Positions 2,950 to 60,215 of a stretch of DNA of 64,000 nt are shown piece by piece. This DNA comes from Lytechinus pictus (taxonomy: Eukaryota), in NCBI RefSeq assembly GCF_037042905.1, contig NW_026974141.1:6572001-6636000 (forward strand), in the 5' to 3' direction. Position 1 is the first letter of the stretch. Every line of letters starts with the position of its first letter. Below the pieces are notes generated by a model. It was not told the DNA's origin. It did no database searches and saw only the letters and a list, made by a program, of their open reading frames with translations. The translations under genes were made by a program, and so were the position numbers.

Positions 2950-3160
2950 CTAACCTGGTTTGTGGCATCTGACGAATGCTTGGTATTTCAGTGACTCTGT
3001 AGAATACGTGCAATTTCGGTTATAAAGCGTATAATACCATAAGTGCAGCTATACACATGCGTCATACTCCCCGAGCTGCTATATTCAAGCACATACATCA
3101 TATATCTCTATCAACTGGAGTATTGCGAAACCAGCGATATATTATTTGTCGGAGAAATGT
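2950..3160 (-). pseudogene. Cassette 1: degenerate Cys-rich (SRCR-like?) exon with phase-1 donor
   Basis: EYSSSGSMTHVYSCTYGIIRF/frameshift/YNRNCTYSTESLKYQAFVRCHKPG. Donor G|GTTAG; last exon base 2955. Confidence 0.7.
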
Positions 3161-3344
3161 GGTTCACTACTTCAATTTAAGTTTAAAACAAGAAATACGT
3201 TCGTGGTGTAATTGCGACGTTCTTTTTTTTTTTGGTGTTGCTACTTTGTTGTTTTGTAATCAATTAAAACTAATATAGTGCAATCTGGCCGTGAATAATA
3301 GTAAGATTATACAATATGACGTTATGATACGCAATTATATATTA

Positions 3345-4001
3345 TCGGTGTGTTGGTTCAGTTAGCAGGGCGTTTATCGCACAACCGGAAGGTCGGCAGT
3401 CGATGCCCCATCTGCGTAAGACGAAACATCGTTTAAAATGGGGGTTGCTGCTTCCCTGTTTGGCATTGAACGATTTAAGCAGGGTGCTACATAACTTTTT
3501 AGAAGCGCTTGCGCGCTCGGGCAAGTAAATGTTTAAATAGTTGGAATATACTTGCCCAAAAATCTATTTCACTTGCCCGAAAAAATCATTGAAAAAAAAG
3601 GTTTACCTCTTCAAAAGAAAGTGTTGCGGTTTTATAAACCATCTGATACATCCCTCTTACATCTTTTGACATGAACTGATCTACCTTGTTATTGCATTTC
3701 TTTTCCAAATTGATTTTATCTTGCCTGTCATGACCAAAATTAGTGTTAATATCATAGCATATCGACCCTAATTTTGGTAATTCTACTGTGAGAATTTTAT
3801 TTTGTACTGTGTGAATTTTGCTTGTTCAATTCGAGCAAGTAGTTTTGGTCTTTACTACAAACACTTGCCCGACTCTAACTTTTACTTGCCCCGGGCAATC
3901 GCGCAAGTGCTTATGTAGCACCCTGGATTTAAGGGATTGGAAAACAGCATTACGGTGCTGCTAAGTGGCTGCCGGGCCAACGATCAATTTAGAAAAAAAA
4001 A
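3345..4001 (+). mobile_element. tRNA-derived SINE interrupted by a hAT MITE
   Basis: A-box-like ggtgtgttggttcagttagc head; body matches the uninterrupted copy at 32839; A-rich tail. Confidence 0.75.
3480..3925. mobile_element. hAT-type MITE
   Basis: Perfect 15-bp TIR CAGGGTGCTACATAA; perfect 8-bp TSD GATTTAAG (3472-3479 and 3926-3933). Confidence 0.92.
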
Positions 4002-4650
4002 ATGAATGAACAATGCAATATGGATTTGCAGTACAATTACCAGTTAAACGATTGTTATGTTCAATGATATTAACGGCGGCTTCTGGCCCTAAATTGCAAC
4101 AGTAACATCCAGATTTTCAGAATGAGATCGAAAGTCTGATCTTTGCGCCATTTCAGAGATAAACATAAACTTTAGAACAGTTGGCGAATAGTTTGCTAAT
4201 GCAGATCTGGCCTGTGGCAGTAGAAGCGTAAATCTGATCCGAGAAGAGTGGGGTGGTAAAAATAATAGATTTAGGTGAAATGTTACAAATTTCGAGGCAA
4301 TCCCATATCAAGCATCAATGCAATGTATATGGGTATGCATAAACATGAACAGATTATAATGTAAGTCAATGTTGGTGATTACAATGAATTACTGCTTATC
4401 ACGGTTTTATTTTCGATGGATGTTTTAATGGTGTTAATTGTGACATATATTTCTTTAGAACAGTTTTGGCTAACCATGCATCCGAGCTAATTAACCGAGA
4501 AAATGTTAATATGTAGGAAGACCGAAATTCAATCCAAAGCAATAAAATGGTTCCAAATGAGATGGCAAAGGAAGGCGGTGTCATCATAATTAGCAGGAAT
4601 AAAGGTACCTTCAGAAATGAATATGGAATCACAACCAAAATATAAACTTC

Positions 4651-10516: not shown

Positions 10517-10842
10517 CTCTAGACAGTGCAGTCACTCTAGAAAATGTAAGACTTAGCGCTACACCATGTTTTTTTGTTCTTGTTTTGTTTGTTTGACGAA
10601 TGGATGCCGGCTGGATAGGTAGGGGGGGGGGTTCCTACAGTCGCCTGTCAGACAGTGCGAAAATAAAAAATTATGCAAGTGTGATATTTAGGATGTCCCT
10701 CCTTATTGACGAAGTAACTAGTAAATGCAAATAAAGTGACATCAATGGAAAGTGATACATATGTAGTGATATTCTTAACAAACTATATGTCTCATTATCA
10801 CTTCCTTTGTGATTCGAAATAGGCTCGAAACAACAAATTTCC

Positions 10843-11050
10843 CTAACCTGGTTTGTGGCATCCAACGAATGCTTGGTATTTCCATGAGTTTGTAGAAAAT
10901 AAACAGTTTCAGCTGTTTGTAACATGGTAATTGTAATTGTACACCCACGTCATACTGGTCGAGCTGCTATATTTAATCCAATCCTTAAGACGTAACGCCC
11001 ACGACTCAAGTGACAACATGTTTGCATATACTGTTGGTTGGACAAATTTC
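10843..11050 (-). pseudogene. Cassette 2: degenerate Cys-rich exon
   Basis: LSNQQYMQTCCH.../KDWIKYSSSTSMTWVYNYNYHVTNS*NCLFSTNSWKYQAFVGCHKPG|GTTAG. The stop is a CGA>TGA change; last exon base 10848. Confidence 0.7.
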
Positions 11051-11889
11051 TATTGAGTAACAGATGGAACGTCTTGGCAGTTTCAATTGCGCAACGCAAG
11101 AATAAAACACGCCACCAATGATGTAAACGCTTTTTTGACAGACCTGACAAATCTCTATCGACCATTAAAAATAGCCATGAGAAAACACCCCCCCCCCTGA
11201 GAAACTGACTATTAACATGCTGCTTCTGAAATTTGTCATAGCGTTTACAAATAAGTGTACGAAATATTTAAGCTTTATTTCAGAAAATGCTTATGCATGG
11301 TCCCCTCGGAAAATGTATGCGTACCGCAATCTACTAATTTGCTTGCCCTTTTATGTCGCCAATTGTGCAGAATTATAAAAGAAAAGAAAAACAAAGTGTC
11401 CTATACACACCAATAAACATGGGTGTAAAACCGGTGCACATTTTCGGGGGGAAATGTTCAGAGCCGTTTCCCACATGATAATTGCCATTTTTTACCTTTT
11501 ACTCTCTTTGCGCATATGCATTCTCGTGGTGGGTGGCGGGATTGCAAGTATGTTGGCACCATGCACAGTCTAGGTTGCTAGCTCTCATCCTCCATCCTTA
11601 TCAAAATGCTCACAGGGCAGTGGCGAAATTTGTATGCATAAAGTGTGGGTTATTGGGTCAAAATATGTTTTTAAATTACAATAAATTTAACTTGTAAATA
11701 AATAAATTGTCATTATTATTAGTAGTAGAAATAGTAGTAGTAGTAGTAATTTGATTGAATGAAAGTGGTTTATATCAACAGTTCAAACCTGACCTGTACT
11801 CGAGGTCTGCAGCTTTTTGTACTTCTTATCAGACGCTAACCTGTTTATATTCAGTAAATTGCTTGGTCTTTTCTTGTAAGATTTTATTG

Positions 11890-14430: not shown

Positions 14431-14546
14431 AGTGTTGTTAGAGGTCATATAAAAGTCATAATCACAAAACGGCACTGCCTTGTTTACTACACCGGGACCG
14501 AATACCGGTGACGTCACAGTCAAAGAACACCCGTCTCGGTAGGCAT

Positions 14547-16158: not shown

Positions 16159-16626
16159 TTGTACTGGTAGGCGGCGAGGAGCTACCAATTATGATAGGGC
16201 CTACAACTTATCTTTGTTTTTATATAAAAGGTTTTATATTGTGTTTAGTGTTTGGTAACGAAGTAGCTTGAATTTAATTCTACTTTTGAATATCGTGTTT
16301 TTTGTTTGAAAAACTCGCCCCACCCACTGATTAACAAGAAAAAAACATGAATAATAAAAACAACTAATTAATGTAATATCTATATAAAAAAATCTCAATT
16401 TCCACTGCACGTGAATCAACTTCAAATTAATCGATAAACTAACAAATTCCTTGGTTGTATACCATTATTTTATCTTGGTCCAACACTCACATCCATCGCT
16501 TTCATTGGGTGACCCCAGTGCTGCGGGTGGGGGCTGATAAAGGATAAAAAGTGTTGGATAACTGATAATACTTTGTCTTAAAATCATGCTAATTGACTTC
16601 AAAGCTTTGAACAAGAAAATTTCCCC

Positions 16627-16850
16627 CTAACCTGGTTTGTGGCATCCGACGAATGCTTAGTATTTCACTGATGACTCTGTAACAAACGAGCAGTTTCGTT
16701 GATGCATAACACCGAAAATGATATCTAACACAGCCGTCATACTGATCGAGCTATGATGTTCAAAATAATCCTTACAATGATTACCCCTCTATACAAATTG
16801 ACATTTCATTGCAATATACTGATAGCTAGAGAAATCAGAATAATAATAAA
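16627..16850 (-). pseudogene. Cassette 3: degenerate Cys-rich exon, no frameshift
   Basis: YYYSDFSSYQYIAMKCQFV*RGNHCKDYFEHHSSISMTAVLDIIFGVMHQRNCSFVTESSVKY*AFVGCHKPG|GTTAG. Two stops and one in-frame 3-nt insertion; last exon base 16632. Confidence 0.72.
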
Positions 16851-19103
16851 TATGCAGTTAATGTCAACTTCCACTCACTGGAGTAACGTTTTGGTCTATG
16901 CATTGAATTCGCATGGAAATTGAAATGAAATAGATTGTCCCGCTAATTAAGTATGTCCTGTTTAACGGAGGATTATGTATCCTGTCCGTCGCCATCTCTA
17001 TGCTTCGATAAGCGTATTGTGTAGCTTTGATTCAGACATAAATATAATCTAAATTCTGCTGGATTTATAACCATCATGAAATGAGTCAATGAAAGTAAAC
17101 TTATTTCTTATCCAGGCATCGAATTCGGCAAATTGTCGTATAATTAAAATTGTGTACAATCGTATACATACGTCGGTCTGTCTGTCTGATTAGAGACCTT
17201 TCGTTTTCTGTGACGAGCCATATGGACGTACGAGATTAAGGAATTTTGGGAGCGCTGCACATGCGCGAAGTAATCTGTGACGAGCCTTCTCGTTCACTGC
17301 CCAAATCTGTGACTGGTATTTGAGGGTTTTGACGTTCAGGGTCATAGTGCTCGAACGAGCGCTAGTTCGTACATGATGACGTCATCCAAGCTTAGCAAAA
17401 ATGAATCAAGCATCAACATTCGAGTTTCGTTGATTCAGCAGGGCTGGTAAACTGCAAATTACTGATTGTTACCAGCTTTTCCATTACATTTAGTGTGTCC
17501 TGTTTTCAGACACTACATATCCGATAGGTAATTGATGTTCCATTTCCAAACAACTGTGTTTTTCGGTTTTTTGCGCAAGAGTGCAAATGTTGCACCCACA
17601 GTCGCCCCACTGGTTCGTAACGTTATGCTACGCCTGATTCTCCGGCCGAGCATCGGCCCCACGGCCCGCTCGCTATCACGCTGGTATATGCTGTGGCCTG
17701 GTACGGTTACGTCGACTTAAATCGAAACTGTTTTCATCAATGTACGAACGTGATACTGAACGAGCGGTGTCACCACTTCTGGTGAACTAGAACTACGTTG
17801 CAGTCGCAGACAATCGAAAGCTTACCATTGTCCTGAACTAACCGCACAGAAACGTTGTTAGCGCTAGCAATGCGTCAACAGAGGCCCTGCTACAACCGGT
17901 AATATGGCAGCAATGCGTAATGCTACAACAATTTACAATGTACTTACACATTGGGATAAATGTTTTGATTTCAAAATCCGAAATATGTGACTGGGCTCAC
18001 TGTTAGCGCTTTGTTAGGCTAGCTACGTGTATGTGCAGCCGGCACTGGTATATGTAATGAGAAAGCACATAGTAAAAGAGCCAGGATTCAGTCTATTCCC
18101 TAAGCAGCTTGCATTTTAACAAGGGCACCCATCTGTGGTTAAGTCCCAAACTTCATGAGAATTGTCTCATGACAGTTTGAATTTTACTACATAGTGCGCC
18201 ATAGTTTGTATAGGTCTCCCAAGTGATTCTAAGCTAGCATTACATCAACACCTATGTACAAACTCCGAGTTAAAATATATAAAAAGCAACTCAGGATAAT
18301 TGTAAATTAACTGGAGAGCATTTTCAGCTTTATAGAGGAAGATTTTAAAAAATAAGGGAGATTTAAATGGATTCTATCATGGATAAGCTTCAAAGAAAAC
18401 TGAATAAATTATCACCCTTCGATAAAAATCCACCGGATACCACACTATTTGGATTTGATGGCGACAGAACCCCCAACGAATGTTACATTGGACAATATTA
18501 GTACACAACACTCCACAGATGTAGATAAGCTGTCACAAGTTCATGTAGAAGATGGAGCCACAAAAAGTTAAACGGGTGGTAAAGTTTCCTCCCGAGAAAA
18601 ATAACTACCAAGAACCAAGAATGGACAAAACCAAGGCTCTGACTATTAAGAAGGTGACTACAAACTCCAAAGATGTAAGTCAGTAGATAAGTGTGACAGC
18701 GCAATCGTAGTATATAATTGCTAAAAATACCAAAATAAAACCAATCGTATGATCGAGTAAGGATTGTGTGACAGCTGGACATGCTTGAACTGTCAACGAA
18801 TGAGTGATGAAATGTACGCCTTCAGCAGCACATGTAGAAATAGGAATTTACATTGGTTCTGTGTTGACTGTGATGAAAAAAGGTACAACTGCTGCTAGAA
18901 ATGTGATACACAAAGGGAACATCAATTTACCAACTTCTGCCGGTGGTGGTAACGATATTAAAGAAATAGCTAACAGACTTGAGAAGAAGCTCAGCGACAA
19001 TGTTTGCAGAAAATTACCACAAGCAAAACAATCCATTAAAAACATGATAGATGATGGAGCGAGGAAGCTAAAACAATCGTGTGCTAAAATAGTGAGTTCA
19101 AAT

Positions 19104-25629: not shown

Positions 25630-25897
25630 TTAAACAAGTCCGATTTTTTCACGTCCACCAGTAGCTGCTACACGCTAATATAAGAGTTGCGCAAGTTAAG
25701 CAGAGGCCTTGCCTCTGAGGGAGCTCGGTCCGTCGATCACTATTGTAAATGCATCCTTCCCCTAGTCTATTTTCAAACCCTGTTCGACAGAAAAGCAGAG
25801 CGCGAGCACATGCCCAAAGGCTAGGGAAATAAATATCTAAGAAAATGGGCGAAGGCGACGACCTATTGTAATACCCCTTCAAGAATTGAAAATGTCC

Positions 25898-26140
25898 CTC
25901 ACCTTGTTTGTTGCATCCAACGAATGCTTGGTATTTCCATAAACCTGTATTAATCGAGTAGTCTCGATGATATTGGATGTACAATGTATTTGCAACCGTA
26001 CACCACAGTCATACTAATGAGCTGCCAAGTTCAATCGAATCCTAACACTAGAAATCCCCGAGACCAAACTGATAACATAAGTATTATACTGACGGTTAGC
26101 GAAATGATAATCATAACCATAAAGATTCAGTTGATCCCAA
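25898..26140 (-). pseudogene. Cassette 4: degenerate Cys-rich exon, closest to cassette 10
   Basis: YHRDYSINTGLWKYQAFVGCNKQG|GTGAG. The donor variant GTGAG keeps the splice consensus; there are indels upstream; last exon base 25903. Confidence 0.68.
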
Positions 26141-26894
26141 TTTCCATTTAGGGTGAAAATATCTGAAATTTGTTTACCACCCCCGTTTATGTAATCAAAT
26201 TATCGTCATTGAATGATACAATGCCCATCTAGAAAGGAAGCAAACGCCTTGCCCCTAACCCGCAAAGCGATACAATGGCCAAGCAATATCAAGCATTACA
26301 TCATCCCAGCAGGGAGACGTGGCCAGATTTGGGCAGTTGAATAACGGGACTCTTTAAAGTCAAGCAATTAATAGAACTAAACCTCCCTGTCTGATCCACT
26401 GCACCTATTTTCAAGTCACTTATAGAAATAATATGCTTGATTCACATAAATTGCCTGAAAAAAATTATTACATAGCTGAACATTTATGACAATACTACAG
26501 TGGCGTAATGGGCCAAAGATATTGAGAAGGAGGGGGCAAATATGATGCACGTAGTAAAGACGCGTGCGAAGCGAGCGAACAAAATTTTCGACCAATTGAG
26601 TGAAAAAAATGTTATTTTTGGTGGACATAGTGTTCATAATACGATATAATACCCTCTCCCATTTGGTCGTAATACATTCAGCTACTGTGTAATGTTTGCT
26701 GTATTGTCCATTCCATGGAAATTTCAATGGGCTACCTATTTCATTTTTTTCGTTAAAAAAAAAATCTAAAAAGCTGCGAGCGAGCAAAATGTTGGACCCT
26801 TTTGACACAAATATATAGTTCGTTCGTATATTTTGACACATTATTCAGAAAAAAAAACGGTGGAGGGGGGGGGGGCAAGCAATGGAATAAAAGA

Positions 26895-27045: not shown

Positions 27046-27744
27046 CAACTAGCGCCCCCCCCCCCCCCTGCTCTCTCAGCGTGAATGTACTGTAATTTTT
27101 GTTGTAGAGGTGGGTTCGGTTAGAAAAACTAAATCTTTGAAATATCCCACACGTCCTCTGGTGCAATGCTTTATCTAGCCTCCCTACACAAGTGAGGGGG
27201 GGGGGGTGCTGATTAACAACGGCGACAAAGGTAGCGTTGAAAACAAGGCTGCATCGTTGCGTCAACTGTTTTGATTGATCGCTGTATTCTTCAATTACTC
27301 AATTGGGTTTGGAACAACAGGCATTACCTTTCCCAACATATCAAATGGCCGACTTGTCAGCTACACCACCTGAGAAAAATGATAGAAATTAATATACCTC
27401 GAATGCTGTGATTGCATACTCAATTCAAGAATCATCTTGTTTGTTTCACGAAAGGCAGCAGGCACATCACGCCGCAATATTAAGAGTTGTTCTCTTTTTA
27501 AATATAACCTCAAATCAGGAATACGTCGGATCAGTAATAAACAAGCAAAAAACACCATGAATAATTATTACGATTCCAAAGACAATGAAATAATTGGTGT
27601 AAGATACACCAAGGTCTGATTTACCAGTCAGAGTATTTTTTTTTCTTTATAATTGAATTTTACTGAAAGCGTCATAAATCATAAGTAATTCTACAAATTC
27701 AAATTTGTGGGAAAGGAAAATGCTAGAAAACCAGCGTAACCCAG

Positions 27745-27900
27745 CATACTGATCGAGCTTTCATATTCAAACACATCATAACAGTGTTAACATCGCTTAT
27801 ACCAAATTGGAAACAGAAATTTGGACGAATATACTGCCTGTCATAAATAGTGTATTGATGACGAAGATGCAATCAATCGAAATGTTATTCACACTACTTG
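27745..27900 (-). pseudogene. Partial cassette lacking the conserved 3' block
   Basis: CATACTGATCGAGCT...CCAAATTGGAAACAGAAATT...AATATACTGC is present, but the donor block is absent. A similar truncation occurs at 36495-36610. Confidence 0.6.
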
Positions 27901-28850: not shown

Positions 28851-29968
28851 TAAAGTTTGATATCGCTTCTGTACTGTGAAAGAACAGCCAGTCAGAGCGC
28901 CTGTATATAGATATTCGGATACTTACACTCTGGATTCGAAATCCGTGCCCCAAATATATATATAATTATATTTTCCATTAAAATGTGTTTTCATCAAAAT
29001 GTAGCTGTATCATGGATTCTAGATAACTTTGCAACCGTCATGCCGTTCACAACTCAACCTTGGTTAAAGATGTGCTAAGTGGAGACGCAAGTTATTTTTT
29101 TCCGTTAAAAGTCATGGGATTTGGTCAAAGATAATTTTTAGTCATGCGTTAAAGTTTACTCGCAGGACTTTTTTATGACACATAACTCTGCAGATGTTGC
29201 AACGCCAACAGAACTTTGACTGTACGTGCACTTGGGTTACATTCAAGTCATGATGCATTTTGTGGGTCACGTGGTAAGTTCAACTCAGTGGTAATTTCAG
29301 GACTTAAAGTTTACCTGCAAGGCTCTCTAATGACAAATAACTTTAAAACCGTCACTCATTCGCCAACTCAAGTTTGGCTGTATGTGCAAAGGAGACCTGC
29401 CTGTCATGGTGCCGTTGGCCTTCATGTCATTAGGTCAAAGGTCATTTGAGGTCATGAATTAAAGTTGGTTTCAAAATTTTAATTTTCCTTTCCTCTTAAT
29501 TTCACTAACGCTTATTAAGCAAAACAAAAATATATGTACTTGTGTTTCCCCTCTAAATAACAAGATCATTGTAACAATTCATATTCAAGAGCCCTTGCCT
29601 TGACTACACCCACAAACATATGTAAACTTCACACATGCAAAATATCAAAGCAATAATACCATTTATATCAAAGGGGTGGAGAAAGTTAAGAAAAGGTTGA
29701 ATGGGGGTAGCATCTTATGAAATAGTCCTTCTCAAAATATATTTGGTATTGGATTTTCATACTATACATTTCACGATTTGGTTTTGGCATTATTCTCTGG
29801 CGTACCAAGGGAGAACGAATATTTCCTTTTATTTGTAGTTCTAGTGGTTAGAGACGTACGTCAGTATTATGCAGTAGAGTTTTACGTAACATGTGTATAT
29901 ACTGTAGGCCTATATATTGACAACTAACAGCAAACGTCGTAAATACATTTGTGAGAATGGCTTTAGTC

Positions 29969-30200
29969 CTAACCTGGTTTGTGACATCCGATGAATGCTT
30001 GGTATTTCACTGAGTAAGTATAAAACGTGCAGTTTCGAAAGTGAGTAACTATTTATTTGTACTCGTACACACCTGTCATACTGATCGAGCTGACATATTC
30101 AAAGACATGTTAACATCGGTGATACCAAATTGGAAACAGAAATTTGGACGAATATACTGCCTGTCATACATAGTGTATTGATGACGAAGATTCAATCAAT
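29969..30200 (-). pseudogene. Cassette 5
   Basis: EYVSSISMTGVYEYK*IVTHFRNCTFYTYSVKYQAFIGCHKPG|GTTAG; last exon base 29974. Confidence 0.72.
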
Positions 30201-30462
30201 CGAAATGATATTCACACTACTTGCTTCAAGACAAATACAGGTCCCAAGTAAAACATTTAATAACAGAGGGTACTTGAAAAGACTGTATTGTATTACTTAT
30301 TTCTGATTTCTGACCTGCCCATGATAGTACGAGCTTTTGGCCAAAAAAAAAAGCGACGAAGACGTTAGATCTACGGCTCGTTTGTAAATTCTCCATGTTA
30401 CTAAAGTAATCCGGGACGATTTTTTTCGCAACTGTCATGAGTCACATTGACGTCTGTCGTAA

Positions 30463-31169: not shown

Positions 31170-32296
31170 TAAAGTTTGATATCGCTTCTGTACTGTGAAA
31201 GAACAGCCAGTCAGAGCGCCTGTATATAGATATTCGGATACTTACACTCTGGATTCGAAATCCGTGCCCCAAATATATATATAATTATATTTTCCATTAA
31301 AATGTGTTTTCATCAAAAAATAAAGCTGTATCATGGATTCTAGATAACTTTGCAACCGTCATGCCGTTCACAACTCAACCTTGGTTAAAGATGTGCTAAG
31401 TGGAGACGCAAGTTATTTTTTCCGTTTGAAGTCATGTGATTCGGTCAAAGATCATTTGTAGTCATGCGTTAAAGTTTACTCGCAGGACTTTCTTATGACA
31501 CATAACTCTGCAGATGTTGCAACGCCAACAGAACTTCAGCTGTACTTGCACTTGGGTTACATTTAAGACACGATGCCTTTTGTGGGTCACGTGGTAAGTT
31601 CAACTCAGTGGTAATTTCAGGAGTTAAAGTTTATTTGCAAGGTTATTTAATGACAGATAACTTTTAAACCGTCACTCATTAGCCAACTCAAGTTTGGCTG
31701 TATGTGCAAAGGAGACCTGCCTGTCATGGTGCCGTTGGCCTTCATCTAATTAGGTCAAAGGTCATTTGAGGTCATGAATTAAAGTTGGTTTCAAAATTTT
31801 AATTTTCCTTTCCTCTTAATTTCACTAACGCTTATTAAGCAAAACAAAAATCTCTGTACTTGTGTGTCCCCTCTAAATAACAAGATCATTGTAACAATTC
31901 ATATTTAAGAGCCCTTGCCTTGACTACACCCTCAAACATATGTAAACTTTACACATGCAAAGTATAAAAGCAATAATACCATTTATATCAAAGGGGTGGA
32001 GAAGGTTAAGAAAAGGTTGAAAGGGGGTAGCATCATATGAAATAGTTCTTCTCAAAATCTATTTGGTATTGTATTTTATGCTATACATTTCACGATTTGG
32101 TTTTGGCATTATTCTCTGGCGTACCAAGGGAGAACGAATATTTCCTTTTATTTGTAGTTCTAGTGGATAGAGACGTACGGCAGTATTATCACGATTATGC
32201 GGTTAAGTTTTACGTAACATGTGTATATACTGTAGGCCTATATATTGAGATCTAACAGCATATACCGTAAATACATTTGTGACAATGGCTTTAGTC

Positions 32297-32550
32297 CTAA
32301 CCTGGTATGTGACATCCGATGAATGCTTGGTATTTCACTGAGTATGTAGAAAACGTGCAATATCAGTAGTAACTATTCATTTGTAATCGTACACACCTGT
32401 CATACTGATCGAGCTGACATATTCAAAGACATGTTAGCATCACTGCAACCTAATTTGGTGACAGAAATTTGCACGAATATACTGCTTGTTGGAAAAATAA
32501 TAATAATAAGGAAGATACAGTTTAATTCAAATGTTACTCAAACTACTTGA
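32297..32550 (-). pseudogene. Cassette 6
   Basis: SSISMTGVYDYK*IV/-4 nt/...CTFSTYSVKYQAFIGCHIPG|GTTAG; last exon base 32302. Confidence 0.7.
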
Positions 32551-33516: not shown

Positions 33517-33684
33517 NNNNNNNNNNNNNNNNNNNNNNNNNNNNNNNNNNNNNNNNNNNNNNNNNNNNNNNNNNNNNNNNNNNNNNNNNNNNNNNNNNNN
33601 NNNNNNNNNNNNNNNNNNNNNNNNNNNNNNNNNNNNNNNNNNNNNNNNNNNNNNNNNNNNNNNNNNNNNNNNNNNNNNNNNNNN
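33517..33684. other. Assembly gap (168 N)
   Basis: Run of N. Confidence 1.
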
Positions 33685-33896: not shown

Positions 33897-36800
33897 ATAA
33901 TGCATTTTCTCTTTGCCAATTTTATCTCATCTATGTCCAACACGCGAAATGTAATATCGTTTTATACACACACACACACATACACACACATACATATATA
34001 CATATAAACAAGGGATCATGGGTTTCTATAAATTCTATGGAGAATATAGAAAGTGACATCAAGTATTATCATCGCGACAAAGAATTACTTTTGCCAAGAC
34101 AAGTGGGCTTGCAGCGCGATTGGAGTGGCAAAGGCAAAGGTAAAGTAATGGTACTATCAACCGGTAAATTTTAACAGCGATTTTATGTAAAAGTTAAATA
34201 TACATGTACGCAGACTTAATAGGTAACTTTTTTTTATTATCAAACATATTTGTTCATGCTTTAATATCAGTGATCTTTCAATCCCCGAAAGTCTTCATAG
34301 TGTATCTGCGTCGTCTCTATAATTTTTTCTGCGGTAGAGACGTCGCAGAGATCACACCACGGACTGCCGATACATCCCCAACAGTCTCCGAGACTGTGGT
34401 ATGTTGGAAGTCGGATAAAGATGGCGCTATAAAGCTGAGCATCATTTTCAAGTCCTTGCTTCACAGACCAGCCTTGCAGCAACGCACGGATGTGTTGCTA
34501 TGAGGATGGTTCACTTGATACGCGCATAGAGTGGAAGTGCGCGCACAATTTGGTTGTCATGCCAATGAAAACATGAACATGCAATACTCTTTTTGATTAA
34601 TTGTGGAATTTTGATGAAGAAACGGCTTATGGCAATGGTAGGAAGAATTGATAAAATACAAAATTATATGAAATATGAAATAAATGTGTACTGCTTTTCG
34701 AAATTAAAACCATTACTGAATTATTACTTATAAAAATGATAATTTTCGGAAAACCCGATTGAATTATGTCACTGAATTAAACCTATCTGCTAATTTCACC
34801 CCACTTTTGTTATGACCCAATAAATCATTTCAGAGTACTTATTCTAGTGAAGTATACAGTTGTTTGAAGGTGACAAGTTTTTACATCAAATATACATTTA
34901 ATGTTAAAAAAAAAAGAGTTTGATACCTGATCCAGGTAACTTTTGCTGCAACACAATTATATAGAACATGCATTATTACCGTGACCGCGCACTCATGGTC
35001 GTGCGCACCCCGGTCGGTGCGTAGGTATGATTGGCTGGCATCTGCCTGCGTACCGGGACTGATGCTAGGAAAATGAAAATTTGTGTAAAATCGTTATACA
35101 AATGCCCATCTATAAAAGCATTAAACGCTTTGCCCCCAACAGCATTGTTTGAAGATACCCATTTTGGGGCAGCAAATCCCGCAAAGTGATACCATTGGCA
35201 ATACAACGTAATACATTATATTTACATTATCCCACGTGAAACTTTTCAGCAGGGAGACCTGACCAGATTTAGGCAGTTTAAAAACGTGGCATTTTGAAGT
35301 CAAGCAATTTAGAACTTTTGACCCCCTTGTTTGGTCTACTGCCCCCATTTTCAAGTCACTTAAAAGAATAATATGCTTGATTCACATAAATTACCTGAAA
35401 AAGTAATTACAAAGCTGAGCATTTATGACAATACTTCACTGGCGTAGTTTGCCAAAGATATTGAGATGGAGGGGGCAAATATGATGCACGTAGTAAAGAT
35501 GCGGATGAAGCGAACGAACAAAATTTTCGACCTATCCAGTGAAAAAAAATATATATATATATTTCTTGATAGACTTTAACATAATACTCAGGAAACTACA
35601 TAATACCCCCTCCTACTTGGTTTCAATGCATTTGGCTACTGCCTCCATTTTCAAGTCACTTATATGAATAATATGCCTCATTCACATGTTTGTTGTATTT
35701 TCCATTCCATGGCCATGTAAATGGGTGACTTATTACATTATTTTAAAATAGAAATTTGGTTCTGCTTGGTGTAACAAAAAGAATGAAACAAAATCCCTAT
35801 CTCTTCGGTGCAGCTTTAATATTGAATTAAATCCACTTTAGTGTTATGTGTGTACACTGTATAAAACTTATACTTATCCGTAGCGCAATAAGAAAAAAAA
35901 ACTTACACAAACAAACAAGCAAAAATTGAAGAAGAGACATGAGGCGTGGAGCAAAATGTCATATTTCACCCATTCCCCCTTCCTTTTCTTTTTATTTTTC
36001 TAGGTCGTGAAACTCCCAAATCTACACGCGAATTGTGATGTTACATAAAATAGTTAAGCAACTAAACAACTTGGTCAGAATAACTGACAGGTCTTCCACA
36101 ATTGTGAAAAAAAAGAAAAAAAATGATGAAAATAAATATACTTCGAATGCTACGATTGCATACTCAATTCAAGAATCCTCTCGTTTGGTTCACCCAAGGC
36201 AACAGGCACAACGCACCGCAATATTGAGAGCTGCTCTCTTTTGTTAATATGACTTCAAATCAGGAATCGGGATACGTGAAAAATAATGATAATATATTAC
36301 CATAAACAATATCTACGATTCCAAAGACAATGAAAATATTGGTGTAAGATAGCACCAAAGACTGATTTAGCAGTCACAAATTTTTTTTTTTCTTCTTTTT
36401 AATTGAATGTTACTGAGAACGTCATAAGTCATAAGTAATTCCGCAAATTCAAATTTGTGGGAAAGGAAAATTCTAGAAAACCAGCGTAAACCGGCATAGT
36501 AATCGAGCTGAAATATTCAAACACGTCCTAACAGTGTTAACATCGCTGATACCATATTGGAAACAGAAATTTGGACGAATATACTGCCTGTCGTACATAG
36601 TGTATTGATGACAAATAATTATTTTTATAGCCCTCACTCATTTGCCAACTCGTTTCTGGCTGAATGCAAAACGAGGACCAGCATATTATGGTGCCGTTGG
36701 CTTTCATGTCATTAGTTTAAAAGTCATTTGATGTCATAAATCAACGTTGGTTTCAAAATTGTTAATTTTCCGTTTTTTCTTAATTTTACCCACTAACACT

Positions 36801-37227
36801 TATTCAAACATCACTGTTCTAGTGTTTCCCTTCTCCATAACAAGATCATTGTAACACTACATATTCAAGCGCTCTCGCCTTGACTATACCCACAAACATA
36901 ATTTTGTAAACTTCACACATGCAAAATATCAATTCAATAATACCATTCATGTCAAAGGGGTGGAGTATGTTAAGGAATGGTTGAAAGGGATTAGCATTAA
37001 GAAATCGCCTTTCTCAAAATTTATTTTTGTATGGCATTATATACTATTTATTTCACAATTGGTTTTTGGTACCATTCTCTTTCGGAGCAAAGGAGCTCGA
37101 ATATAAATCAATGTTTGTAGTTCTAGTGATTAGAGGCGTAAGACAATATTATGCAGCAAAGATGTACGTAAAACTAAGAGAGCTATCTATATACATCGTA
37201 AATACATATGTGGCAATGGCTTTAGTC

Positions 37228-37520
37228 CTAACCTGGTTTGTGGCATCCGACGAATGCTTGGTATTTCGTTGAGTATGTATCAAACGTGCAGATTGTTAGT
37301 GCGTAATCATATATTTACAACGGTACACATCCGTCATACTGATCGAGCTGACATAATCAAACACATCCTAACACTGTTAACATCGCTGAGAACAAATAGA
37401 TGACACAAATTTGAACGAATATACTGCTTGTTGGAGAAATAAAAAAAATAATCATAACCAAGCCACAGTTTAATCCAAATGTAACTTACAATACTTTCTG
37501 TATGACAAACATTTGCCTCC
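37228..37520 (-). pseudogene. Cassette 7, closest to cassette 11
   Basis: WIKLWLGYDYFFYFSNKQYIRSNLCHLFVLSDVN/fs/C*DVFDYVSSISMTDVYRCKYMITH*/fs/CTFDTYSTKYQAFVGCHKPG|GTTAG; last exon base 37233. Confidence 0.72.
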
Positions 37521-40252: not shown

Positions 40253-40840
40253 ATATATAGACGTGTTTTTCACTACTGTTTCAGAAACGGATTTTGAATT
40301 CTCTTTTTTTGTCACATCATGGGCACTGTCGAATAGTGGGACTTTACTTTTCATTTTTTGACAGCCACGCTTCTATTAAAATGTACGATTTTATTTCTAC
40401 GACATTCACTAAATCATTTGTGATTATTCTTTTCAATATGTCGAAGCAGATTATTTTGATTTTACTCAGGTACATTTTTCACTGCTGATCCTTGACTGTT
40501 GGCGGTGAGGCCATGGCAACGCGTCTTTAGATGCGTCTTGTACAGTAAGCCTCCTCCATCTTCAGCGCGATAATATCTTTGAAAGGTGAGTTTCAGATTC
40601 TGTATGCCTTTGAGCAGACGTGTTTTTCACGACTGTTTCAGAAACGGATTTTGAATTATCTTATTTGTCACATCATGGGCGCTGACGAAGGGTGTGACTT
40701 TAACTTTCATTTTTGAGAGCTACGCCCCTTTCAAAATCTACGATTTTAATTCTATGGCATTTACTAAACGAATACATATATAAATATATATATATATAAC
40801 CAAATAAACCATAGATACTTTTGTGACAATGACTTTAGTC

Positions 40841-41100
40841 CTAACCTGGTTTGTGGCATCTGACAAATGTTTGGTATTTTACTGAGTATGTATAAAACGT
40901 GCAGTTTCGGTAGTATCTTTTTATTTGTACTCGTACACACCTGTCATACTGATCGAGCTGACATATTTAAAGACATACTAACAATGTTAACATCGCAGAC
41001 ACCAAACTGGTGACAGAAATTTTCACTAATATACTGCTTGTTAGACCAAGAATAATAATAAGGAAGATACAGTTTAATTCAAATGTTACTCAAACTACTT
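40841..41100 (-). pseudogene. Cassette 8
   Basis: PYYYSWSNKQYISENFCHQFGVCDVN.../SSISMTGVYEYK*/-4 nt/YRNCTFYTYSVKYQTFVRCHKPG|GTTAG; last exon base 40846. Confidence 0.7.
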
Positions 41101-45580: not shown

Positions 45581-45604
<24 letters not shown>

Positions 45605-45646
45605 ACTAAATACACCGCAAATACATTTGTGACAATGACTTTAGTC

Positions 45647-45900
45647 CTAACCTGGTTTGTAGCATCCGACGAATGCTTGGTATTTCACTGAGCAGTTTCG
45701 GTAGTGAGTAACTTTTTATTTGTTCTCGTACACATCTGTCATACTGATCGAGCTGACATATTCAAAGACATGTTAACATCGCTGAAACCAAATTTGGTGA
45801 CAGAAATATACGACACGAATATACTGCTTGTTAGACCAATCATAACCAAAACGAGAATCAAAAGGAAGATACAGTTTTATTCAAATGTTACTCAAACTAC
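45647..45900 (-). pseudogene. Cassette 9
   Basis: SSISMTDVYENK*KVTHYRNC(15-nt in-frame deletion)SVKYQAFVGCYKPG|GTTAG; last exon base 45652. Confidence 0.7.
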
Positions 45901-51100: not shown

Positions 51101-51138
51101 ACCCATGCATTATTACAATGTTTTGTAGGGGTCGTAGT

Positions 51139-53800: not shown

Positions 53801-54344
53801 TTTGCACATTTGTGCTTTATGAAGGCATTACTATAGGATTTTAGTTTAGAACGGATTCGCCAAAAATCCCTTCAAATTTATTACATTTGTGGGTAAAGTC
53901 ATTATTACATTTGTGGGCGATCAAAAATTATTACATTTGTGGGTAAAGTGCATTATTACATTTGTGGGTGAAATTATTACATTTGTGGGTAAAGTGTTAT
54001 TACATTTGTGGGCGTTATTACATTTGTGGGTAAAGTGTTATTACGTTTGTGGGCGTTATTACATTTGTGGGCGTTATTACATTTGTGGGTGCAACACCCC
54101 CCCCCCAAAAAAAAAAAAAAAAAAAAAAAATCCTCTACAATCTAGCCTAAAAGTGCCCTGAGAGAAAATGGTCACAAAACCTTAGCAAAGAGGACCTTTC
54201 TAAAAGTAACATTGCCACGCTGAGCTCTTCTACGTTCATAGTCATGAATCAATGCAATACATGATACATGTAAGAGCACGACCACACTCGGTACACGCAC
54301 ACCAATTATTACATCGGCGTCTCCTACCAAAGCTACCAAGAGTT

Positions 54345-55964: not shown

Positions 55965-56472
55965 CAAGAGTTGGTCATAGGGACTTCTCAAATTCACGTG
56001 TGCCGATCTCTGATCGCGAATGCAAGGATGGATAGTATTAAATAAAAATAAGAAAGATCAGAACTTTACAATGGACCTACTTAAATAGTTAAATAGTGAA
56101 CATTTTAATCATACCAAGGTTAGTTTTAGGTAATAATATAATGGGTTATTGAATATCAACCCCGATGATTTAATTGACGAATCAAAATGTTTAAACTGTC
56201 TTGAACGAGTTCGATTGGCCACGGTCGCCAGTAGCTGCTATTTGTGTAAGACCCTCCTACACACGCAATGAATAATGAGTTTTGCAAGTTTAATATCAAA
56301 GGCCTCACCAATAAGGCGGTTCGGCCTGACGATAAATACTGTAAACGCACACTGGTTTAGACCATTCCAAACCCTTTTTTACACAAGCCAAGCAGAGAGC
56401 GTGGACCTGCCAAATGCTAGGGAAAAAAGCGACAACCTACTGTAATACTCATTCAGAACTAAAGCAAAGTCC

Positions 56473-56715
56473 CTAACCTGGTTTGTAGCATCCAACGAAT
56501 GCTTGGTATTTCCATGAACCTGTATTAATCGAGTAGTCCCGGCGATATTTAGCTTATTTGCAACTGTACATTACCCTTATACTGATCGAGTTGCTATATT
56601 CAATCCAATCCTAACACTAGAAATTCCCGAGACCAAACTGATAACATGAGTGCTATATAATATACTGACGGTTAGACAAATCTGTATAATAATCATAAAG
56701 ACCCAGTTAATTCAA
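56473..56715 (-). pseudogene. Cassette 10
   Basis: LGLYDYYTDLSNRQYII*HSCYQFGLGNF*C*DWIEYSNSISIRVMYSCK*AKYRRDYSINTGSWKYQAFVGCYKPG|GTTAG. Continuous frame with four stops; last exon base 56478. Confidence 0.72.
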
Positions 56716-59700
56716 TTTTCTATTGAATTAATTTACGCCCCCCCCCCCCCTAGTCCACCTGCTTGACTATTGAGCAATATGCCGACAACGGACATTGATG
56801 GCGCATCACGCCTTTACAAAAATTATCCCCTTTTTCAAGCGGACATATTCGTGGAGTCGCGCGATCACTGGGTCTGGCGCGGTGTATACTATGTGAATCA
56901 GTATGTATGTATCAGAGAATTAAGCGAACAAGAAAACACGGTCACTATCTGGACTACCTCCCGTTTATGGAGCAATACAAGCAAATACCCATCTAGAAAG
57001 AATAATGTTTCCCCCCCCCCCCCCACTAGTGTTTGAAGATACCCTTTTCAGAACAGCACAGCCCGCAGAAATTTCTTAGACAGGAGGGACAGAAGCCAAC
57101 CTTCACTGAATCGCGACGGGGGCATCTACAAACTTTTTAAGAGTTTATGACGAACTTCATCACAGCACCGTCGCTTCTTGCAGTAATCAGACGGGTTATA
57201 TTACTGAGGAAGACTTAAGTGTGTAGTTGGAAATTTAGAGGTAAATCATTTTTACCGATTTTTATTTTGCATTTGGATCACACGTTTAAATTTGCGGATA
57301 TTTTACCGAAGCAGATTAACTTTCATTAGTTGTATACATTGTTTCCAAGAATTATTTGTGCACTGCATACAACAATGCAAAATGAGAAGACGAACACTGT
57401 TGGAACAAAAAACAATCCTAACCATTATAAAACATACATTATAAAACATAAAACATACAGAATGTTATGTCATATGAACAAAGGAGGTACATGTTTAGCC
57501 TTTGTTTACACATAGCTGCAAAGATCGGTTACGAATGAATGATAACGAATCATGCAGTAATGCAAATTTTTACACCGTGAAATGATAATCGAATCATAGC
57601 ATGCAATGCTTCTGATCATGACTTTTTTCCCCTTTTTTTCATGAACATAAGCTGATAGTTCGTTGGAGAACGCAAACGCTTATTTACGACGGTAGTTGAT
57701 TTTGGAAGAGACTTTTTGGGCCCGTCGTTATGGTCGTAAAACTCTGTCCTGCAATGCAAATTGTGTGACATGAAATTTATTTTTAGTTTCGCATCTGCAA
57801 CGGAAACATTCAATTTGCGTTTCGTGTGCAAAATTATGGTTGCTACTATGGTAACAGCGATATATAAGAGCTCGAGAGGCCGTCCGGGGGGCCCACTTCC
57901 TTTGACGAGTGGATAGAAGGCGCGACCACGCGTAAAAGTGGACAGAGTGGGCAAGTACGTTACGTATACGCCTATGTAACGTTATAAGGGTGTCAAAGAC
58001 GATGTTTAAAATACTGAAAAAAGGGATACATTTCCGATACGTGTAGGATTTCACAAGCCAAATACTTGTTAAGAGATGCATTTTCATAATCTGGAAAATA
58101 CTTGCTTCCCTTGTTTAGGGTGAATTTTTCACCAGGTACCAAGCAAACCCGGGGGGCACTTCAATTGACGGCTGGATACAAGTATTTTCTATTTTCTGAA
58201 AATGCACCCCTAACATCTCGTGTGAAAACCTACCCTTATAACAATGATATGGAACAAAACAGTACCCTTTACATATATTCCCTTAATAATAGATACCCAA
58301 ATTAAGTACAGCAATATTTTTTAATTGTGATGTCACGGACGTCAGCTCTACCTTTACTTACATTTGGTTTAGTACCGCCCCACCTCTCATACCTCGCTCA
58401 TGTCGGACTCTAAACACGTAGTATTGGGGCAATAATTACATCCTTTATAAATCATTTTAGTCGTGTTTATTTCCTGGCAAATTTGATCGTAAACACGTAC
58501 ATATAGCTTTCCAAGCGAAATATATACCCCCTTTTCATTGTTTTAGTGTCTTTGACACCCTTAATAAGTTACGTACGTAACGTGCCAAATCTTGAAAAGG
58601 AGATCCCTTTACGTCGCACATGGTATTCATTCGTCAAAGGAAGTGCAATCCAAATCAAGTGGTCTTGCGGTAAGCGTTTATGACGTAAGTGACGCAGGAG
58701 GGACGGGGAGGGGGCATGGAATTAAGAGGCTGAAGTTAATAAAGTTACTTTTTCAGGAAAAGAGAGTGCAAGACTGTGGCATATTGAGAGACAATGATTC
58801 CGTGTTATACTGGAAGGGAAACATCATGCTGAAAATGATGGAGCCAAACATCAATGACTCTAAGCGAGTACTAACAATCTTAACGCAACTAGAGTTCCCG
58901 TTACCCTCACATCGTAAATGTTGTTGTAGAGATAGATTATGCCAAACTACTTTGAAATAATCCACCTCCGGCATGCCCGGTGAAATGCTTTATAAATAGC
59001 ACTCCTACACAAAAATAAGGAGGTGCTGATTTACAGCAGCCGTAAGACAGCGTTTGAAAATGACAATAATCATCATCATCACCACGATCATCATCATAAT
59101 AATATAACATTATTACAGCGCACGTATCAGCCTTGTTAAGTGCTCCTGGCGCTCCTATATAATTCCGGCTAAGCTACATGTAGTCCACCGGTACCGGTGG
59201 TTACTGTGGTTTTATTTTATTTTTTTTGGGGGGGGGGATTACACTCATATGAGTTCTCAAAAACAGAAATTACCTTTCCCAACAAACCAGATGGCCGACT
59301 TCTCAGCTACATCGCCGCCCCCAAAAATAATAATAATAATAAAATGAAAATAAATAAATTAACACATAGGCCTACATAATGAAGTTCCGTTCTGTCATCA
59401 CATACTCAATAGAAATTCAAGAATCATCTTGCTTGTTGCACCGAGGGCAGCATGCACATCGCGCGAATTTATGAAGAATTCTTTTTTTGTTTCTAAATCT
59501 CAAATCAGGAATCGGTAAACGTGAAAAATAATAAAAACAACACAACTGATCTGTACGATTCCAAAGGCAATGAAATCATTGGTGTAAGATAGTACCAAGG
59601 GCTGACTTAACCATCACAGTGTTTTTTTTATTGGTGAAAACGCTTAAAACGTCCACTGAGATGTCATAACTAAGTCCATAAATTTGAATTTTTCTGAGAA

Positions 59701-59945
59701 AGTAAAATGTTTGGAAAATAGAATTACCCAGCATACTAAAAGAGTTAAAAATCATAAACGCAATTTGGAGTGATGCAAACATCGTGCAAGATACTTTAAC
59801 GTGAATTGTGACACCACAGCTTTTGTGATATGAGACGCACAACAATTAATATTTGCAGTAAAGTTTTAAATAAAGGGCCTTTTATGTCAACAACAAGAAC
59901 AACAAATCGAGTATCGTATTCACATTTGTGTCAAGCTTGTTAGGG

Positions 59946-60215
59946 CTAACCTGGTTTGTGGCATCCGACGAATGCTTGGTATTTCGTTGGGTTTGTTGTA
60001 TCAAACGTGCTGTTTGGTAGTGCGTAATCATATATATAAACAAAGGTACACATCCTTCATACTGATAGAGCTGACATATTTAACACATCTTCACACTGTT
60101 AGCATTGCTCAGACCAATTAAATAACAGAATTTTAAATGAATATACTGCTTGTCAGAGAAATCATAGTGATAATGATAATTGCTAAGCCACAGTTCAATC
60201 CAATTGTTACTTACT
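59946..60215 (-). pseudogene. Cassette 11
   Basis: VSNNWIELWLSNYHYHYDFSDKQYIHLKFCYLIGLSNAN/fs/...SSISMKDVYLC/fs/...TFDTTNPTKYQAFVGCHKPG|GTTAG; last exon base 59951. Confidence 0.7.

What the first reader, a model, noticed from the sequence alone, without database searches (positions are those of the whole stretch)
2950..60215. Co-oriented array of 11 variable exon-like cassettes, each with its own phase-1 splice donor
Seen: 11 minus-strand cassettes with last exon bases at 2955, 10848, 16632, 25903, 29974, 32302, 37233, 40846, 45652, 56478 and 59951, all ending ...G|GT(T/G)AG. My hand-built consensus is W-I-K/E-L-x-L...F/L-S-N-K-Q-Y-I-x-x-x-F-C-H-Q-F-G-L-x4-C-K-D-x2-E-Y-x-S-S-I-S-M-T-x-V-Y-x-C-x-Y-x-V-T-H-x-R-N-C-T-F-x-T-x-S-x-K-Y-Q-A-F-V-G-C-H-K-P-G. 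Many substitutions are synonymous in this frame (gtc/gtt, tgc/tgt, ttc/ttt, aac/aat, acg/aca, tac/tat), so it is probably the ancestral coding frame. Known: CxQ(L/F)G, C-x9-C and a terminal AxVxC, together with a phase-1 boundary, recall SRCR domains, a family greatly expanded in echinoderm immunity. The cysteine spacing is non-canonical, so the SRCR label is tentative. Inference: a same-strand bank of variable cassettes with no obvious complete gene between them resembles either variable-exon arrays (Dscam, protocadherin, UGT1 style) spliced to constant exons beyond the low-coordinate end, or a pseudogene donor library for gene conversion (as for chicken Ig pseudo-V).
Basis: partly seen in the sequence, partly recalled or inferred. 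Interest (0 to 1): 0.8.

Follow-up and report, generated by a model that had tools for sequence, protein, structure and literature searches.

The report
Decayed exon-relic array in sea urchin
Eleven full and at least two partial same-strand copies of a roughly 255-base cysteine-rich exon relic are all broken and were multiplied by unequal crossing-over, so this looks like ordinary gene debris and not a working variable-exon or gene-conversion system, apart from one unexplained, very conserved 41-base block at the old splice site.

Summary
All 11 cassettes sit at the stated minus-strand positions and end in ...AG|GT(T/G)AG. A profile search adds two clear and two weak partial copies, and none lies on the plus strand.

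The functional reading does not hold:
- Every copy carries stops and frameshifts in all three frames, and so does the majority consensus, so much of the amplification came after the frame was lost.
- Variation shows no codon periodicity.
- The old units share no second exon.
- The window holds no constant exon, no docking-type complement and no Pfam domain.
- Contigs of four public runs show no listed splice joint at two of the donors.
- Public protein collections hold only three unnamed, unspliced ORF calls of the family.

The SRCR label stays unconfirmed.

Cassette c29974 is a chimera (5' part 96% like a truncated copy, 3' part 98-100% like c32302). It marks unequal crossing-over between cassettes as the way the array grows.

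One thing is unexplained. The last 41 exon bases plus GTTAGG stay about 86-94% identical between lineages whose remaining core is about 60% identical, and third codon positions are as conserved as the others. Gene conversion or a DNA/RNA-level constraint could explain this.

The scan had noted this block before, on this same window.

The parts
2946..3185 (-). cassette c2955, old singleton lineage; full core, broken frame
   Evidence: nhmmer E 3e-50; stops in the donor frame
10838..11085 (-). cassette c10848, old singleton lineage
   Evidence: nhmmer E 4e-57; stop 21 codons before the donor
16622..16873 (-). cassette c16632, old singleton lineage; TAA inside the conserved block
   Evidence: nhmmer E 5e-60...VKY*AFVGCHKP
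25893..26146 (-). cassette c25903, sister of c56478; donor GTGAGG
   Evidence: nhmmer E 9e-61; flanks shared with 56261-56724 at 72%
27741..27887 (-). partial copy p27741 (5' half only, model 2-148), broken just after the 18-nt block
   Evidence: nhmmer E 9e-26; 96% identical to the 5' 100 nt of c29974
29964..30208 (-). cassette c29974, a chimera: 5' part of p27741 type, 3' part of c32302 type
   Evidence: identity by segment; flank 93% identical to c32302's over 1.5 kb; tandem duplication 27745-30280 = 30077-32607
32292..32536 (-). cassette c32302 (family A)
   Evidence: nhmmer E 8e-67
36490..36615 (-). partial copy p36490 (model 25-149), same breakpoint and same downstream sequence as p27741
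   Evidence: nhmmer E 6e-22; 27375-27865 = 36119-36615 at 84%
37222..37484 (-). cassette c37233 (family A); its 41-nt block equals the consensus
   Evidence: nhmmer E 3e-71; zero-mismatch block matches
40836..41088 (-). cassette c40846 (family A)
   Evidence: nhmmer E 6e-69
45642..45890 (-). cassette c45652 (family A), with a 15-nt deletion
   Evidence: nhmmer E 8e-61; indel list
56469..56720 (-). cassette c56478, sister of c25903
   Evidence: nhmmer E 4e-63
59941..60209 (-). cassette c59951 (family A, sister of c37233)
   Evidence: nhmmer E 3e-61; shares the -1 frameshift at model 184 with c37233
37227..37273 (-). example of the hyper-conserved block: last 41 exon bases plus GTTAGG
   Evidence: between-lineage identity 0.86 (exon part) and 0.94 (GTTAGG) against 0.60 for the rest of the core
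37333..37350 (-). example of the second conserved block (18 nt, CAGCTCGATCAGTATGAC)
   Evidence: 14 minus-strand matches against 0.01 expected
33517..33684 (.). assembly gap in a spacer; not part of any cassette

Best explanation
This is a tandem array of dead copies of one exon-sized unit, on the minus strand of a sea-urchin genome. Earlier notes of this scan name the species as Lytechinus pictus.

- Origin (inferred): the unit is about 255 nt of conserved core ending at a phase-1 GT donor. It probably descends from an exon for a small cysteine-rich extracellular domain, possibly a derived SRCR.
- Growth (shown): the array grew by repeated unequal crossing-over between the copies themselves. 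This produced an 8-9-kb higher-order repeat, a 2.33-kb tandem duplication and at least one chimeric cassette.
- Timing (shown for family A, inferred for the rest): much of the amplification came after the reading frame was lost, because several disabling lesions are shared and the majority consensus is itself broken.
- Present state (inferred from negative evidence): nothing indicates that the cassettes are now translated, spliced to a common exon, or used as conversion donors for an intact gene.
- Conserved blocks (inferred): the 18-nt and 41-nt blocks are conserved at the nucleotide level, not the protein level. The most likely cause is continuing gene conversion or crossing-over among copies, which keeps going where long identical tracts survive. 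A residual role as a splice donor or enhancer in a non-coding transcript is the alternative.
For: - Copies: 11 full and 2-4 partial, all on the minus strand, none on the plus strand.
- Every copy is broken in all frames. The majority consensus has three stops and a frame break.
- Frameshifts are shared by subsets: -7@102 in three copies, -4@174 in two, -1@184 in two.
- No codon periodicity.
- Higher-order repeats at 26307, 35247 and 43169. Tandem duplication 27745-30280 = 30077-32607 at 92%.
- Chimera c29974: 96% to p27741 and 71% to c32302 in model 1-100. It is 100% and 98% to c32302 in model 101-150 and in the block, and 93% in 1.5 kb of flank. Yet in model 151-208 it is 83% to c32302 and 91% to c40846 and c45652.
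- Old units share nothing but the core, at DNA level and protein level.
- Related copies elsewhere keep the frame open for about 60 residues: P0002, P0003 and P0004. These are unspliced ORF calls in which 'PGE' is read-through of GGT GAG.
- No annotated relative.
- No Pfam domain in the cassette pieces or in the ten largest ORFs.
- No listed joint at donors 37233 or 40846 in four runs. X1 contigs are colinear with the genome over 36500-37256 and 37237-38005.
Against: - Neutral decay alone does not explain the blocks. Between-lineage identity is 0.86-0.94 in the block and 0.60 elsewhere.
- Conversion is inferred, not demonstrated, for the old lineages.
- RNA evidence is thin. It comes from assembled contigs of four runs, two of unknown kind, covering two donors. 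Another 226 joints and 2058 loose ends were not shown.
- The rest of the genome could not be searched, so an intact paralog or downstream constant exons beyond the window cannot be excluded.
- The short profile (34 positions) would miss relatives below about 50% identity.
Confidence: 0.6

Rival explanations
1. The cassettes were once consecutive, constitutive exons of one large multi-domain gene, with one domain per phase-1/phase-1 exon as in multi-SRCR genes. The whole gene later died (a unitary pseudogene). The copies would then have diverged while functional and decayed afterwards.
For: - Co-orientation, spacing of 2-9 kb, unrelated spacers between old copies and a phase-1 donor on each copy.
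- Acceptor-like YAG a few tens of bases upstream of the core in several copies, read by eye.
- The two conserved blocks fall where the two best-kept motifs of the putative domain lie (SSISMT, KYQAFVGCHKPG).
Against: - No third-position excess of change anywhere, and none in the conserved block, where old paralogs under protein-level selection should have saturated synonymous sites.
- Shared stops and frameshifts, and a broken consensus, show that at least family A (6 of 11 copies) multiplied when already dead.
- No flanking first or last exons are recognisable.
Confidence: 0.15
2. It is a dispersed non-coding repeat family, for example a non-autonomous retroposon whose conserved 3' end with a small hairpin is needed for mobilisation. 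It happens to be concentrated here.
For: - Conservation is at nucleotide level with no codon signal.
- The most conserved part is terminal and holds a 6-bp hairpin.
- A copy on Logan contig L001 has only the 3' 146 nt, ending at the same point.
- In run X3 the bin holding the consensus block has word depth 609, against 5-16 beside it. That suggests further copies elsewhere.
Against: - 15 of 15 detected copies are on one strand.
- Chimeric and higher-order structure points to local recombination, not insertion.
- No tails, target duplications or terminal inverted copies were seen.
- Copies elsewhere keep a cysteine-rich frame open for about 60 residues.
- Depth in contig tables is not a copy number.
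Confidence: 0.1
3. The array is functional at the RNA level. Each unit supplies a non-coding alternative exon or decoy whose conserved 41-nt end and GTTAGG donor are used in splicing or in RNA pairing. This would be a Dscam-, protocadherin- or UGT1-like choice among many upstream exons, without coding content.
For: - The block and the donor hexamer, including its non-consensus +3 T and +6 G, stay 86-94% identical between lineages that are otherwise about 60% identical.
- The block is also kept in a copy from another sample (L001).
- One run of unknown kind holds the whole of c37233.
Against: - No listed joints or loose ends at the two donors examined. Contigs there are colinear with the genome.
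- No complementary docking sequence in 64 kb.
- No conserved RNA structure (-4.5 kcal/mol consensus) and no Rfam match.
- c16632 and c40846 carry changes inside the block.
Confidence: 0.08
4. The cassettes are a pseudogene donor library that diversifies an intact gene elsewhere by gene conversion, as chicken pseudo-V segments do.
For: Mosaic tracts and conversion-like patches exist among the cassettes themselves, all on the same strand.
Against: - No intact acceptor gene in the window.
- No annotated protein carries this exon.
- Donor segments of known systems are largely open, whereas these carry several stops and frameshifts each.
Confidence: 0.04

Closest known systems
Tandem pseudogene or exon-relic arrays shaped by unequal crossing-over and gene conversion (birth-and-death with concerted evolution in multigene clusters)
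   Same: Co-oriented copies, nested higher-order repeats, chimeric copies with breakpoints at homologous positions, shared disabling lesions and patchy identity between copies.
   Different: Only one exon-sized block is retained per unit, and old units share no other exon. Two short blocks stay far more conserved than the rest, at the nucleotide level.
SRCR (scavenger receptor cysteine-rich) domain exons of sea-urchin multi-SRCR genes
   Same: The best-preserved relative (P0002) has the motifs CxQLGFG, C-x9-C and a terminal (A/T)-F-V-G-C, in the SRCR order. The boundary is phase 1 and the size is one exon per domain. 95 of the 100 nearest ESM-Atlas clusters for P0002:1-61 are SRCR.
   Different: There is no Pfam SRCR match even at E 10 and no PDB match. 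The last segment is about 5-7 residues shorter and lacks one cysteine. The WGTVCDD-type N-terminal motif is absent. The language-model lead did not replicate with two other pieces.
Variable-exon clusters (Dscam1 exon clusters; protocadherin and UGT1A variable first exons)
   Same: Many similar exons on one strand, each with its own donor, in a region with no complete gene between them.
   Different: Those exons are open and expressed, with conserved promoters or docking and selector RNA pairs and downstream constant exons. Here all frames are broken, no complement of the conserved block exists in the window, and no splicing was seen.
Chicken immunoglobulin pseudo-V donor arrays
   Same: A bank of non-functional, related segments showing evidence of recombination between them.
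   Different: No adjacent functional acceptor gene. The segments are much more decayed. All copies share one orientation, whereas pseudo-V segments occur in both. No evidence of transfer to an expressed gene.

Membership tests
SRCR domain (Pfam PF00530) | Significant match to the family profile | tested here: not met
   hmmscan at E up to 10 found no SRCR hit for 10 window pieces or for P0002, P0004:1-60 and P0003:120-187. PDB phmmer and profile searches found no SRCR chain.
SRCR domain (Pfam PF00530) | Characteristic cysteine pattern and motif order (CRQLG ... C-x9-C ... AGVxC) in a domain of about 100-110 residues | tested here: inconclusive
   P0002 shows CCQLGFG, C-x9-C and TFVGC in the right order. 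However, the last segment is short and lacks one cysteine, and the N-terminal half shows no SRCR motif. ESM Atlas: 95 of 100 nearest clusters are SRCR for P0002:1-61 at scores 0.76-0.83, which is a lead only. There was none for c37233's N-half or for P0004:1-57.
SRCR domain (Pfam PF00530) | SRCR fold | tested here: inconclusive
   AlphaFold2 on alignment A6 gave mean pLDDT 42.7 and pTM 0.17, so the model is unusable and no fold search was run.
Variable-exon array (Dscam, protocadherin or UGT1 type) | Each variable exon has an intact reading frame | tested here: not met
   All 11 copies have stops and frameshifts in all three frames.
Variable-exon array (Dscam, protocadherin or UGT1 type) | Donors are spliced to common constant exons | tested here: inconclusive
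   No joint at 37233 or 40846 among the listed joints of four runs, and X1 contigs are colinear with the genome there. The data are contigs only, cover two donors and are partly unlisted. The downstream 2.9 kb holds no recognisable exon, and the region beyond the window could not be tested.
Variable-exon array (Dscam type) | Docking-site and selector RNA complementarity | tested here: not met
   No plus-strand (complementary) match of the conserved blocks at up to 3 mismatches, and none by the profile. This holds within the 64-kb window only.
Gene-conversion donor library (pseudo-V type) | An intact acceptor gene of the same family that receives tracts | tested here: inconclusive
   None in the window. 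No annotated relative in 1.84 billion representatives or 5.8 billion clusters. The rest of this genome could not be searched.
Dispersed transposable-element family | Independent insertions: both orientations, target-site duplications, tails | tested here: not met
   15 of 15 copies lie on the minus strand. No tails or inverted termini were seen. The structure is explained by local duplication. Genome-wide copy number remains unknown; one search gives only a depth hint.
Tandem array grown by unequal crossing-over | Co-orientation, higher-order periodicity and chimeric copies with breakpoints at homologous positions | tested here: met
   Units start at 26307, 35247 and 43169. The 2332-nt tandem duplication has its junction inside the cassette. 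c29974 is 96% like p27741 in its 5' part and 98-100% like c32302 in its 3' part.

The most novel reading that the evidence does not exclude
The 41-nt block plus GTTAGG donor, kept at the nucleotide level in every unit and in copies from other samples, could be a working module and not a by-product of conversion. In that case the array would be a bank of non-coding alternative or decoy 5' splice-site exons, or repeated modules of a long non-coding RNA, whose choice or number regulates a gene beyond the low-coordinate end of the window.
Probability: 0.1. Interest if true: 0.6.

Novelty: new member of a known kind. Interest (0 to 1): 0.25.

Why it matters
As it stands, this is a tidy example of how unequal crossing-over between short homologous relics builds and reshuffles a pseudo-exon array. 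One step is caught in the act: a full-length cassette was re-created from a truncated copy and a neighbour. That is useful for annotation, because these cassettes should not be called as SRCR exons or immune diversity genes. It is not surprising. The only point that could matter more widely is the nucleotide-level conservation of the 41-base exon end and its donor across otherwise saturated copies. If that reflects function and not conversion, it would point to a repeated RNA-level element of unknown role in echinoids.

Tried and rejected
- Pfam on stop-free pieces and on the three related ORFs gave nothing.
- PDB sequence and profile searches gave nothing.
- AlphaFold2 on the 61-residue alignment gave pLDDT 43, so no fold search was run.
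- Rfam gave only a tRNA-like SINE head at the gathering threshold, and nothing in the cassettes at E up to 1.
- RNAalifold gave no meaningful structure (-4.45 kcal/mol, one 6-bp hairpin).
- A spliced-leader or snRNA-type gene reading was rejected by eye. I saw no Sm-site-like element, and conservation fades within about 25 nt after the GT.
- A recombination-signal-sequence reading was rejected. The would-be heptamer is variable while the would-be spacer is the conserved part.
- Helitron, LINE-tail or MITE readings were rejected. There is no CTRR end, no tail repeats and no inverted terminal copy.
- Two DNA pattern scans of JGI metagenome contigs gave 0 hits.
- MAFFT stacked N-half and C-half pieces on each other (A1, A3). 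Those alignments were discarded, and A4 and A6 were used instead.
- The search for homologous proteins is length-limited and returned only P0002.
- Findings look-ups by sequence and by relatives were blank.

Full report
**Observation.** Ten are followed by GTTAG and c25903 by GTGAG. The repeat finder recovers the family in part (families D6, D8, D9). A profile built from the 11 copies recovers all of them with E-values of 1e-50 to 1e-71. It adds partial copies at 27887-27741 and 36615-36490, and weak ones at 32787-32722 and 46152-46062. It finds nothing on the plus strand. Three sub-blocks give 10, 10 and 14 matches, all on the minus strand, where shuffles give 0.00-0.01. Earlier notes of this scan name the genome as the sea urchin Lytechinus pictus. 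I did not verify that.

**Assembly gap.** The N run at 33517-33684 lies in a spacer and touches no cassette. The sequence on its two sides (32239-32838 and 34077-34849) matches, in the same order and orientation, 45589-46189 and 46344-47131 of a sister unit. The gap sits in a 1.24-kb stretch that the sister unit lacks. That stretch includes a tRNA-Val-like SINE head at 32842-32914. Order and orientation across the gap therefore look correct. Exact continuity cannot be known, and no reading frame depends on it.

**Anatomy.** The shared core is about 255 nt and ends a few bases past the GT.
- Old lineages (c2955, c10848, c16632 and the pair c25903/c56478) share only this core with each other and with family A (c29974, c32302, c37233, c40846, c45652, c59951). 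DNA and protein-level self-comparisons show no second shared block between old units apart from transposon pieces.
- So the cassettes are not each embedded in a set of other decayed exons.
- Two blocks stand out. One is 18 nt long (CAGCTCGATCAGTATGAC). The other is the last 41 exon bases together with GTTAGG.

**Coding capacity.**
- Every copy has stops and frameshifts in all three frames. The longest open stretch ending at a donor is 41 codons, and c16632 has a TAA inside the conserved block.
- The majority consensus of the 11 copies itself has three stops and a frame break.
- Frameshifts are shared by subsets: -7 at model 102 in three copies, -4 at 174 in two, -1 at 184 in two.
- Much of the multiplication, at least in family A, therefore came after the frame was lost.
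The minor-allele fraction is 0.217, 0.193 and 0.213 at codon positions 1, 2 and 3.

**Was it ever an exon?** Probably.
- A profile of the C-terminal half was searched against 1.84 billion representative proteins. It found three true relatives, P0002, P0003 and P0004, plus two spurious repeat proteins.
- All three are unnamed, single-member, prokaryote-style ORF calls on eukaryote-like contigs: two contigs of ENA sample ERZ26222911 and one Logan contig of SRR28370578.
- They are not spliced. The residues after CHKPG (EAF, ETF) fit a read-through of a GTGAG-type donor. The DNA of P0004's contig shows exactly this (ccag|gtgaggctttt, L001). No DNA was available for the other two.
In P0002 these run from CCQLGFG through YSMTWVYSC, then C-x9-C, to KYQTFVGCHKPG. 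This supports that frame as an ancestral coding frame.
- No annotated protein carries the exon. The 34-position profile would miss relatives below roughly 50% identity.

**Which domain?** The SRCR label remains a lead.
- Pfam finds nothing at E up to 10 in ten window pieces or in the three ORFs.
- PDB searches are blank.
- AlphaFold2 on alignment A6 gives pLDDT 43.
- The ESM-Atlas feature search places 95 of the 100 nearest clusters of P0002:1-61 in SRCR families, at scores of only 0.76-0.83. The N-terminal half of c37233 and P0004:1-57, which lacks the CxQLG motif, give nothing.
- The motif order fits SRCR. The last segment is too short and lacks one cysteine.

**How the array grew.**
- There is an 8-9-kb higher-order repeat, with homologous segments starting at 26307, 35247 and 43169. 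There is also a 2332-nt tandem duplication (27745-30280 = 30077-32607, 92%) whose junction lies inside the cassette.
- Segment-wise identities show that c29974 is a chimera. In model 1-100 it is 96% identical to the truncated copy p27741 and 95% to p36490, but only 71% to c32302. In model 101-150 it is 100% identical to c32302, and in the terminal block 98%. The 1.5-kb downstream flank is 93% identical between the two.
- This is the product expected from unequal crossing-over between the truncated copy and the full copy 2.3 kb away. The event re-created a full-length cassette.
- In model 151-208, c29974 is closer to c40846 and c45652 (91%) than to its twin c32302 (83%). The -4 frameshift at model 174 is shared by c32302 and c40846 but not by c29974. 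These patches look like later gene conversion among cassettes.

**The unexplained part.**
- Between the five lineages, identity is 0.86 over the last 41 exon bases, 0.94 over GTTAGG and 0.60 over the rest of the core.
- Within the block, identity at codon positions 1, 2 and 3 is 0.82, 0.90 and 0.86. The four CpG columns are the least conserved part of it (0.67, against 0.88 for the other 37 columns).
- Conservation is therefore at the nucleotide level. Old paralogs kept only by protein-level selection should have saturated third positions.
- The block is also kept in the copy from another sample (L001).
- In run X3 (a different organism code, probably DNA) the bin holding the consensus block has word depth 609, against 5-16 in neighbouring bins. 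That hints at further copies elsewhere, but the tool warns that this is not a copy number.
- I favour continuing conversion or crossing-over that persists where long identical tracts survive. A DNA- or RNA-level function cannot be excluded.
- It is not a structured RNA (consensus -4.45 kcal/mol, one 6-bp hairpin). It matches no Rfam family. It has no complementary partner in the window.

- On 36500-42400, none of the listed joints or loose ends of four runs lies at donor 37233 or 40846. The listed ones fall in high-copy transposon stretches.
- Run X1, of unknown kind, holds the whole of c37233. Its contigs are colinear with the genome over 36500-37256 and 37237-38005 and abut inside the repeated block.
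- This is weak negative evidence. The data are contigs and not reads, only two donors were covered, and many rows were not shown.

**Surroundings.** No ORF in the 2.9 kb downstream or the 3.8 kb upstream of the array looks like an exon. The ten largest ORFs checked have no Pfam domain. The spacers hold transposon debris and satellites.

**Verdict.**
- The idea of an ancestral phase-1 coding exon is plausible.
- The SRCR label is unconfirmed.
- The variable-exon and donor-library readings are not supported.
- The best reading is an ordinary decayed exon-relic array expanded by unequal crossing-over, with one nucleotide-level conserved block still to be explained.

Noticed in passing
window 32842-32914 (+), within repeat 32841-32975; related copy at 3346-3479 (+): A tRNA-Val(CAC)-like sequence (Rfam 36.7 bits; also found by ARAGORN) heads a roughly 135-nt repeat. 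The repeat occurs twice in the window at 76% identity, each time a few hundred bases upstream of a cassette. It is probably a tRNA-derived SINE.
   Followed up: partly
window 4709-5876 and 7245-8934: Two blocks of 169/327-nt tandem repeats lie in inverted orientation to each other, with related pieces at 6011-6764 between them. This is a foldback-like arrangement. ORFs of 110-139 aa overlap the left block.
   Followed up: no
window 49169-54071: A 49/99-nt satellite (35 copies, 52084-53804) is bracketed by inverted arrays of 41-50-nt repeats (49169-49366 and 53874-54071) and by an inverted copy of the 49-nt unit at 49427-49633. It looks like a large foldback-type element inserted in the array.
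   Followed up: no
window 38076-38863, 40046-40439, 42213-42400; inverted relative at 19110-19702; related copy at 15997-16133: These stretches have summed contig word depths of 1e4 to 1e6 in all four runs laid, including those of a second organism code. They are high-copy transposon sequences shared between the two organisms.
   Followed up: partly
window 20369-20800 versus 20861-21295: The two arms show protein-level and DNA similarity on opposite strands, a palindromic pair of about 430 nt each. It is probably the inverted termini of a transposon or a hairpin element.
   Followed up: no
window 13637-14405 (+): Two adjoining ORFs (145 and 115 aa) gave no Pfam hit. By eye, from memory, the sequence resembles the region upstream of the reverse transcriptase in LINE elements.
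   Followed up: partly
window 17742-17767 and 20046-20063 (-): Weak matches to the 18-nt conserved block and to the profile (3 mismatches; nhmmer E 3.4 at 17765-17742), again on the minus strand. They may be further, nearly erased cassettes.
   Followed up: no
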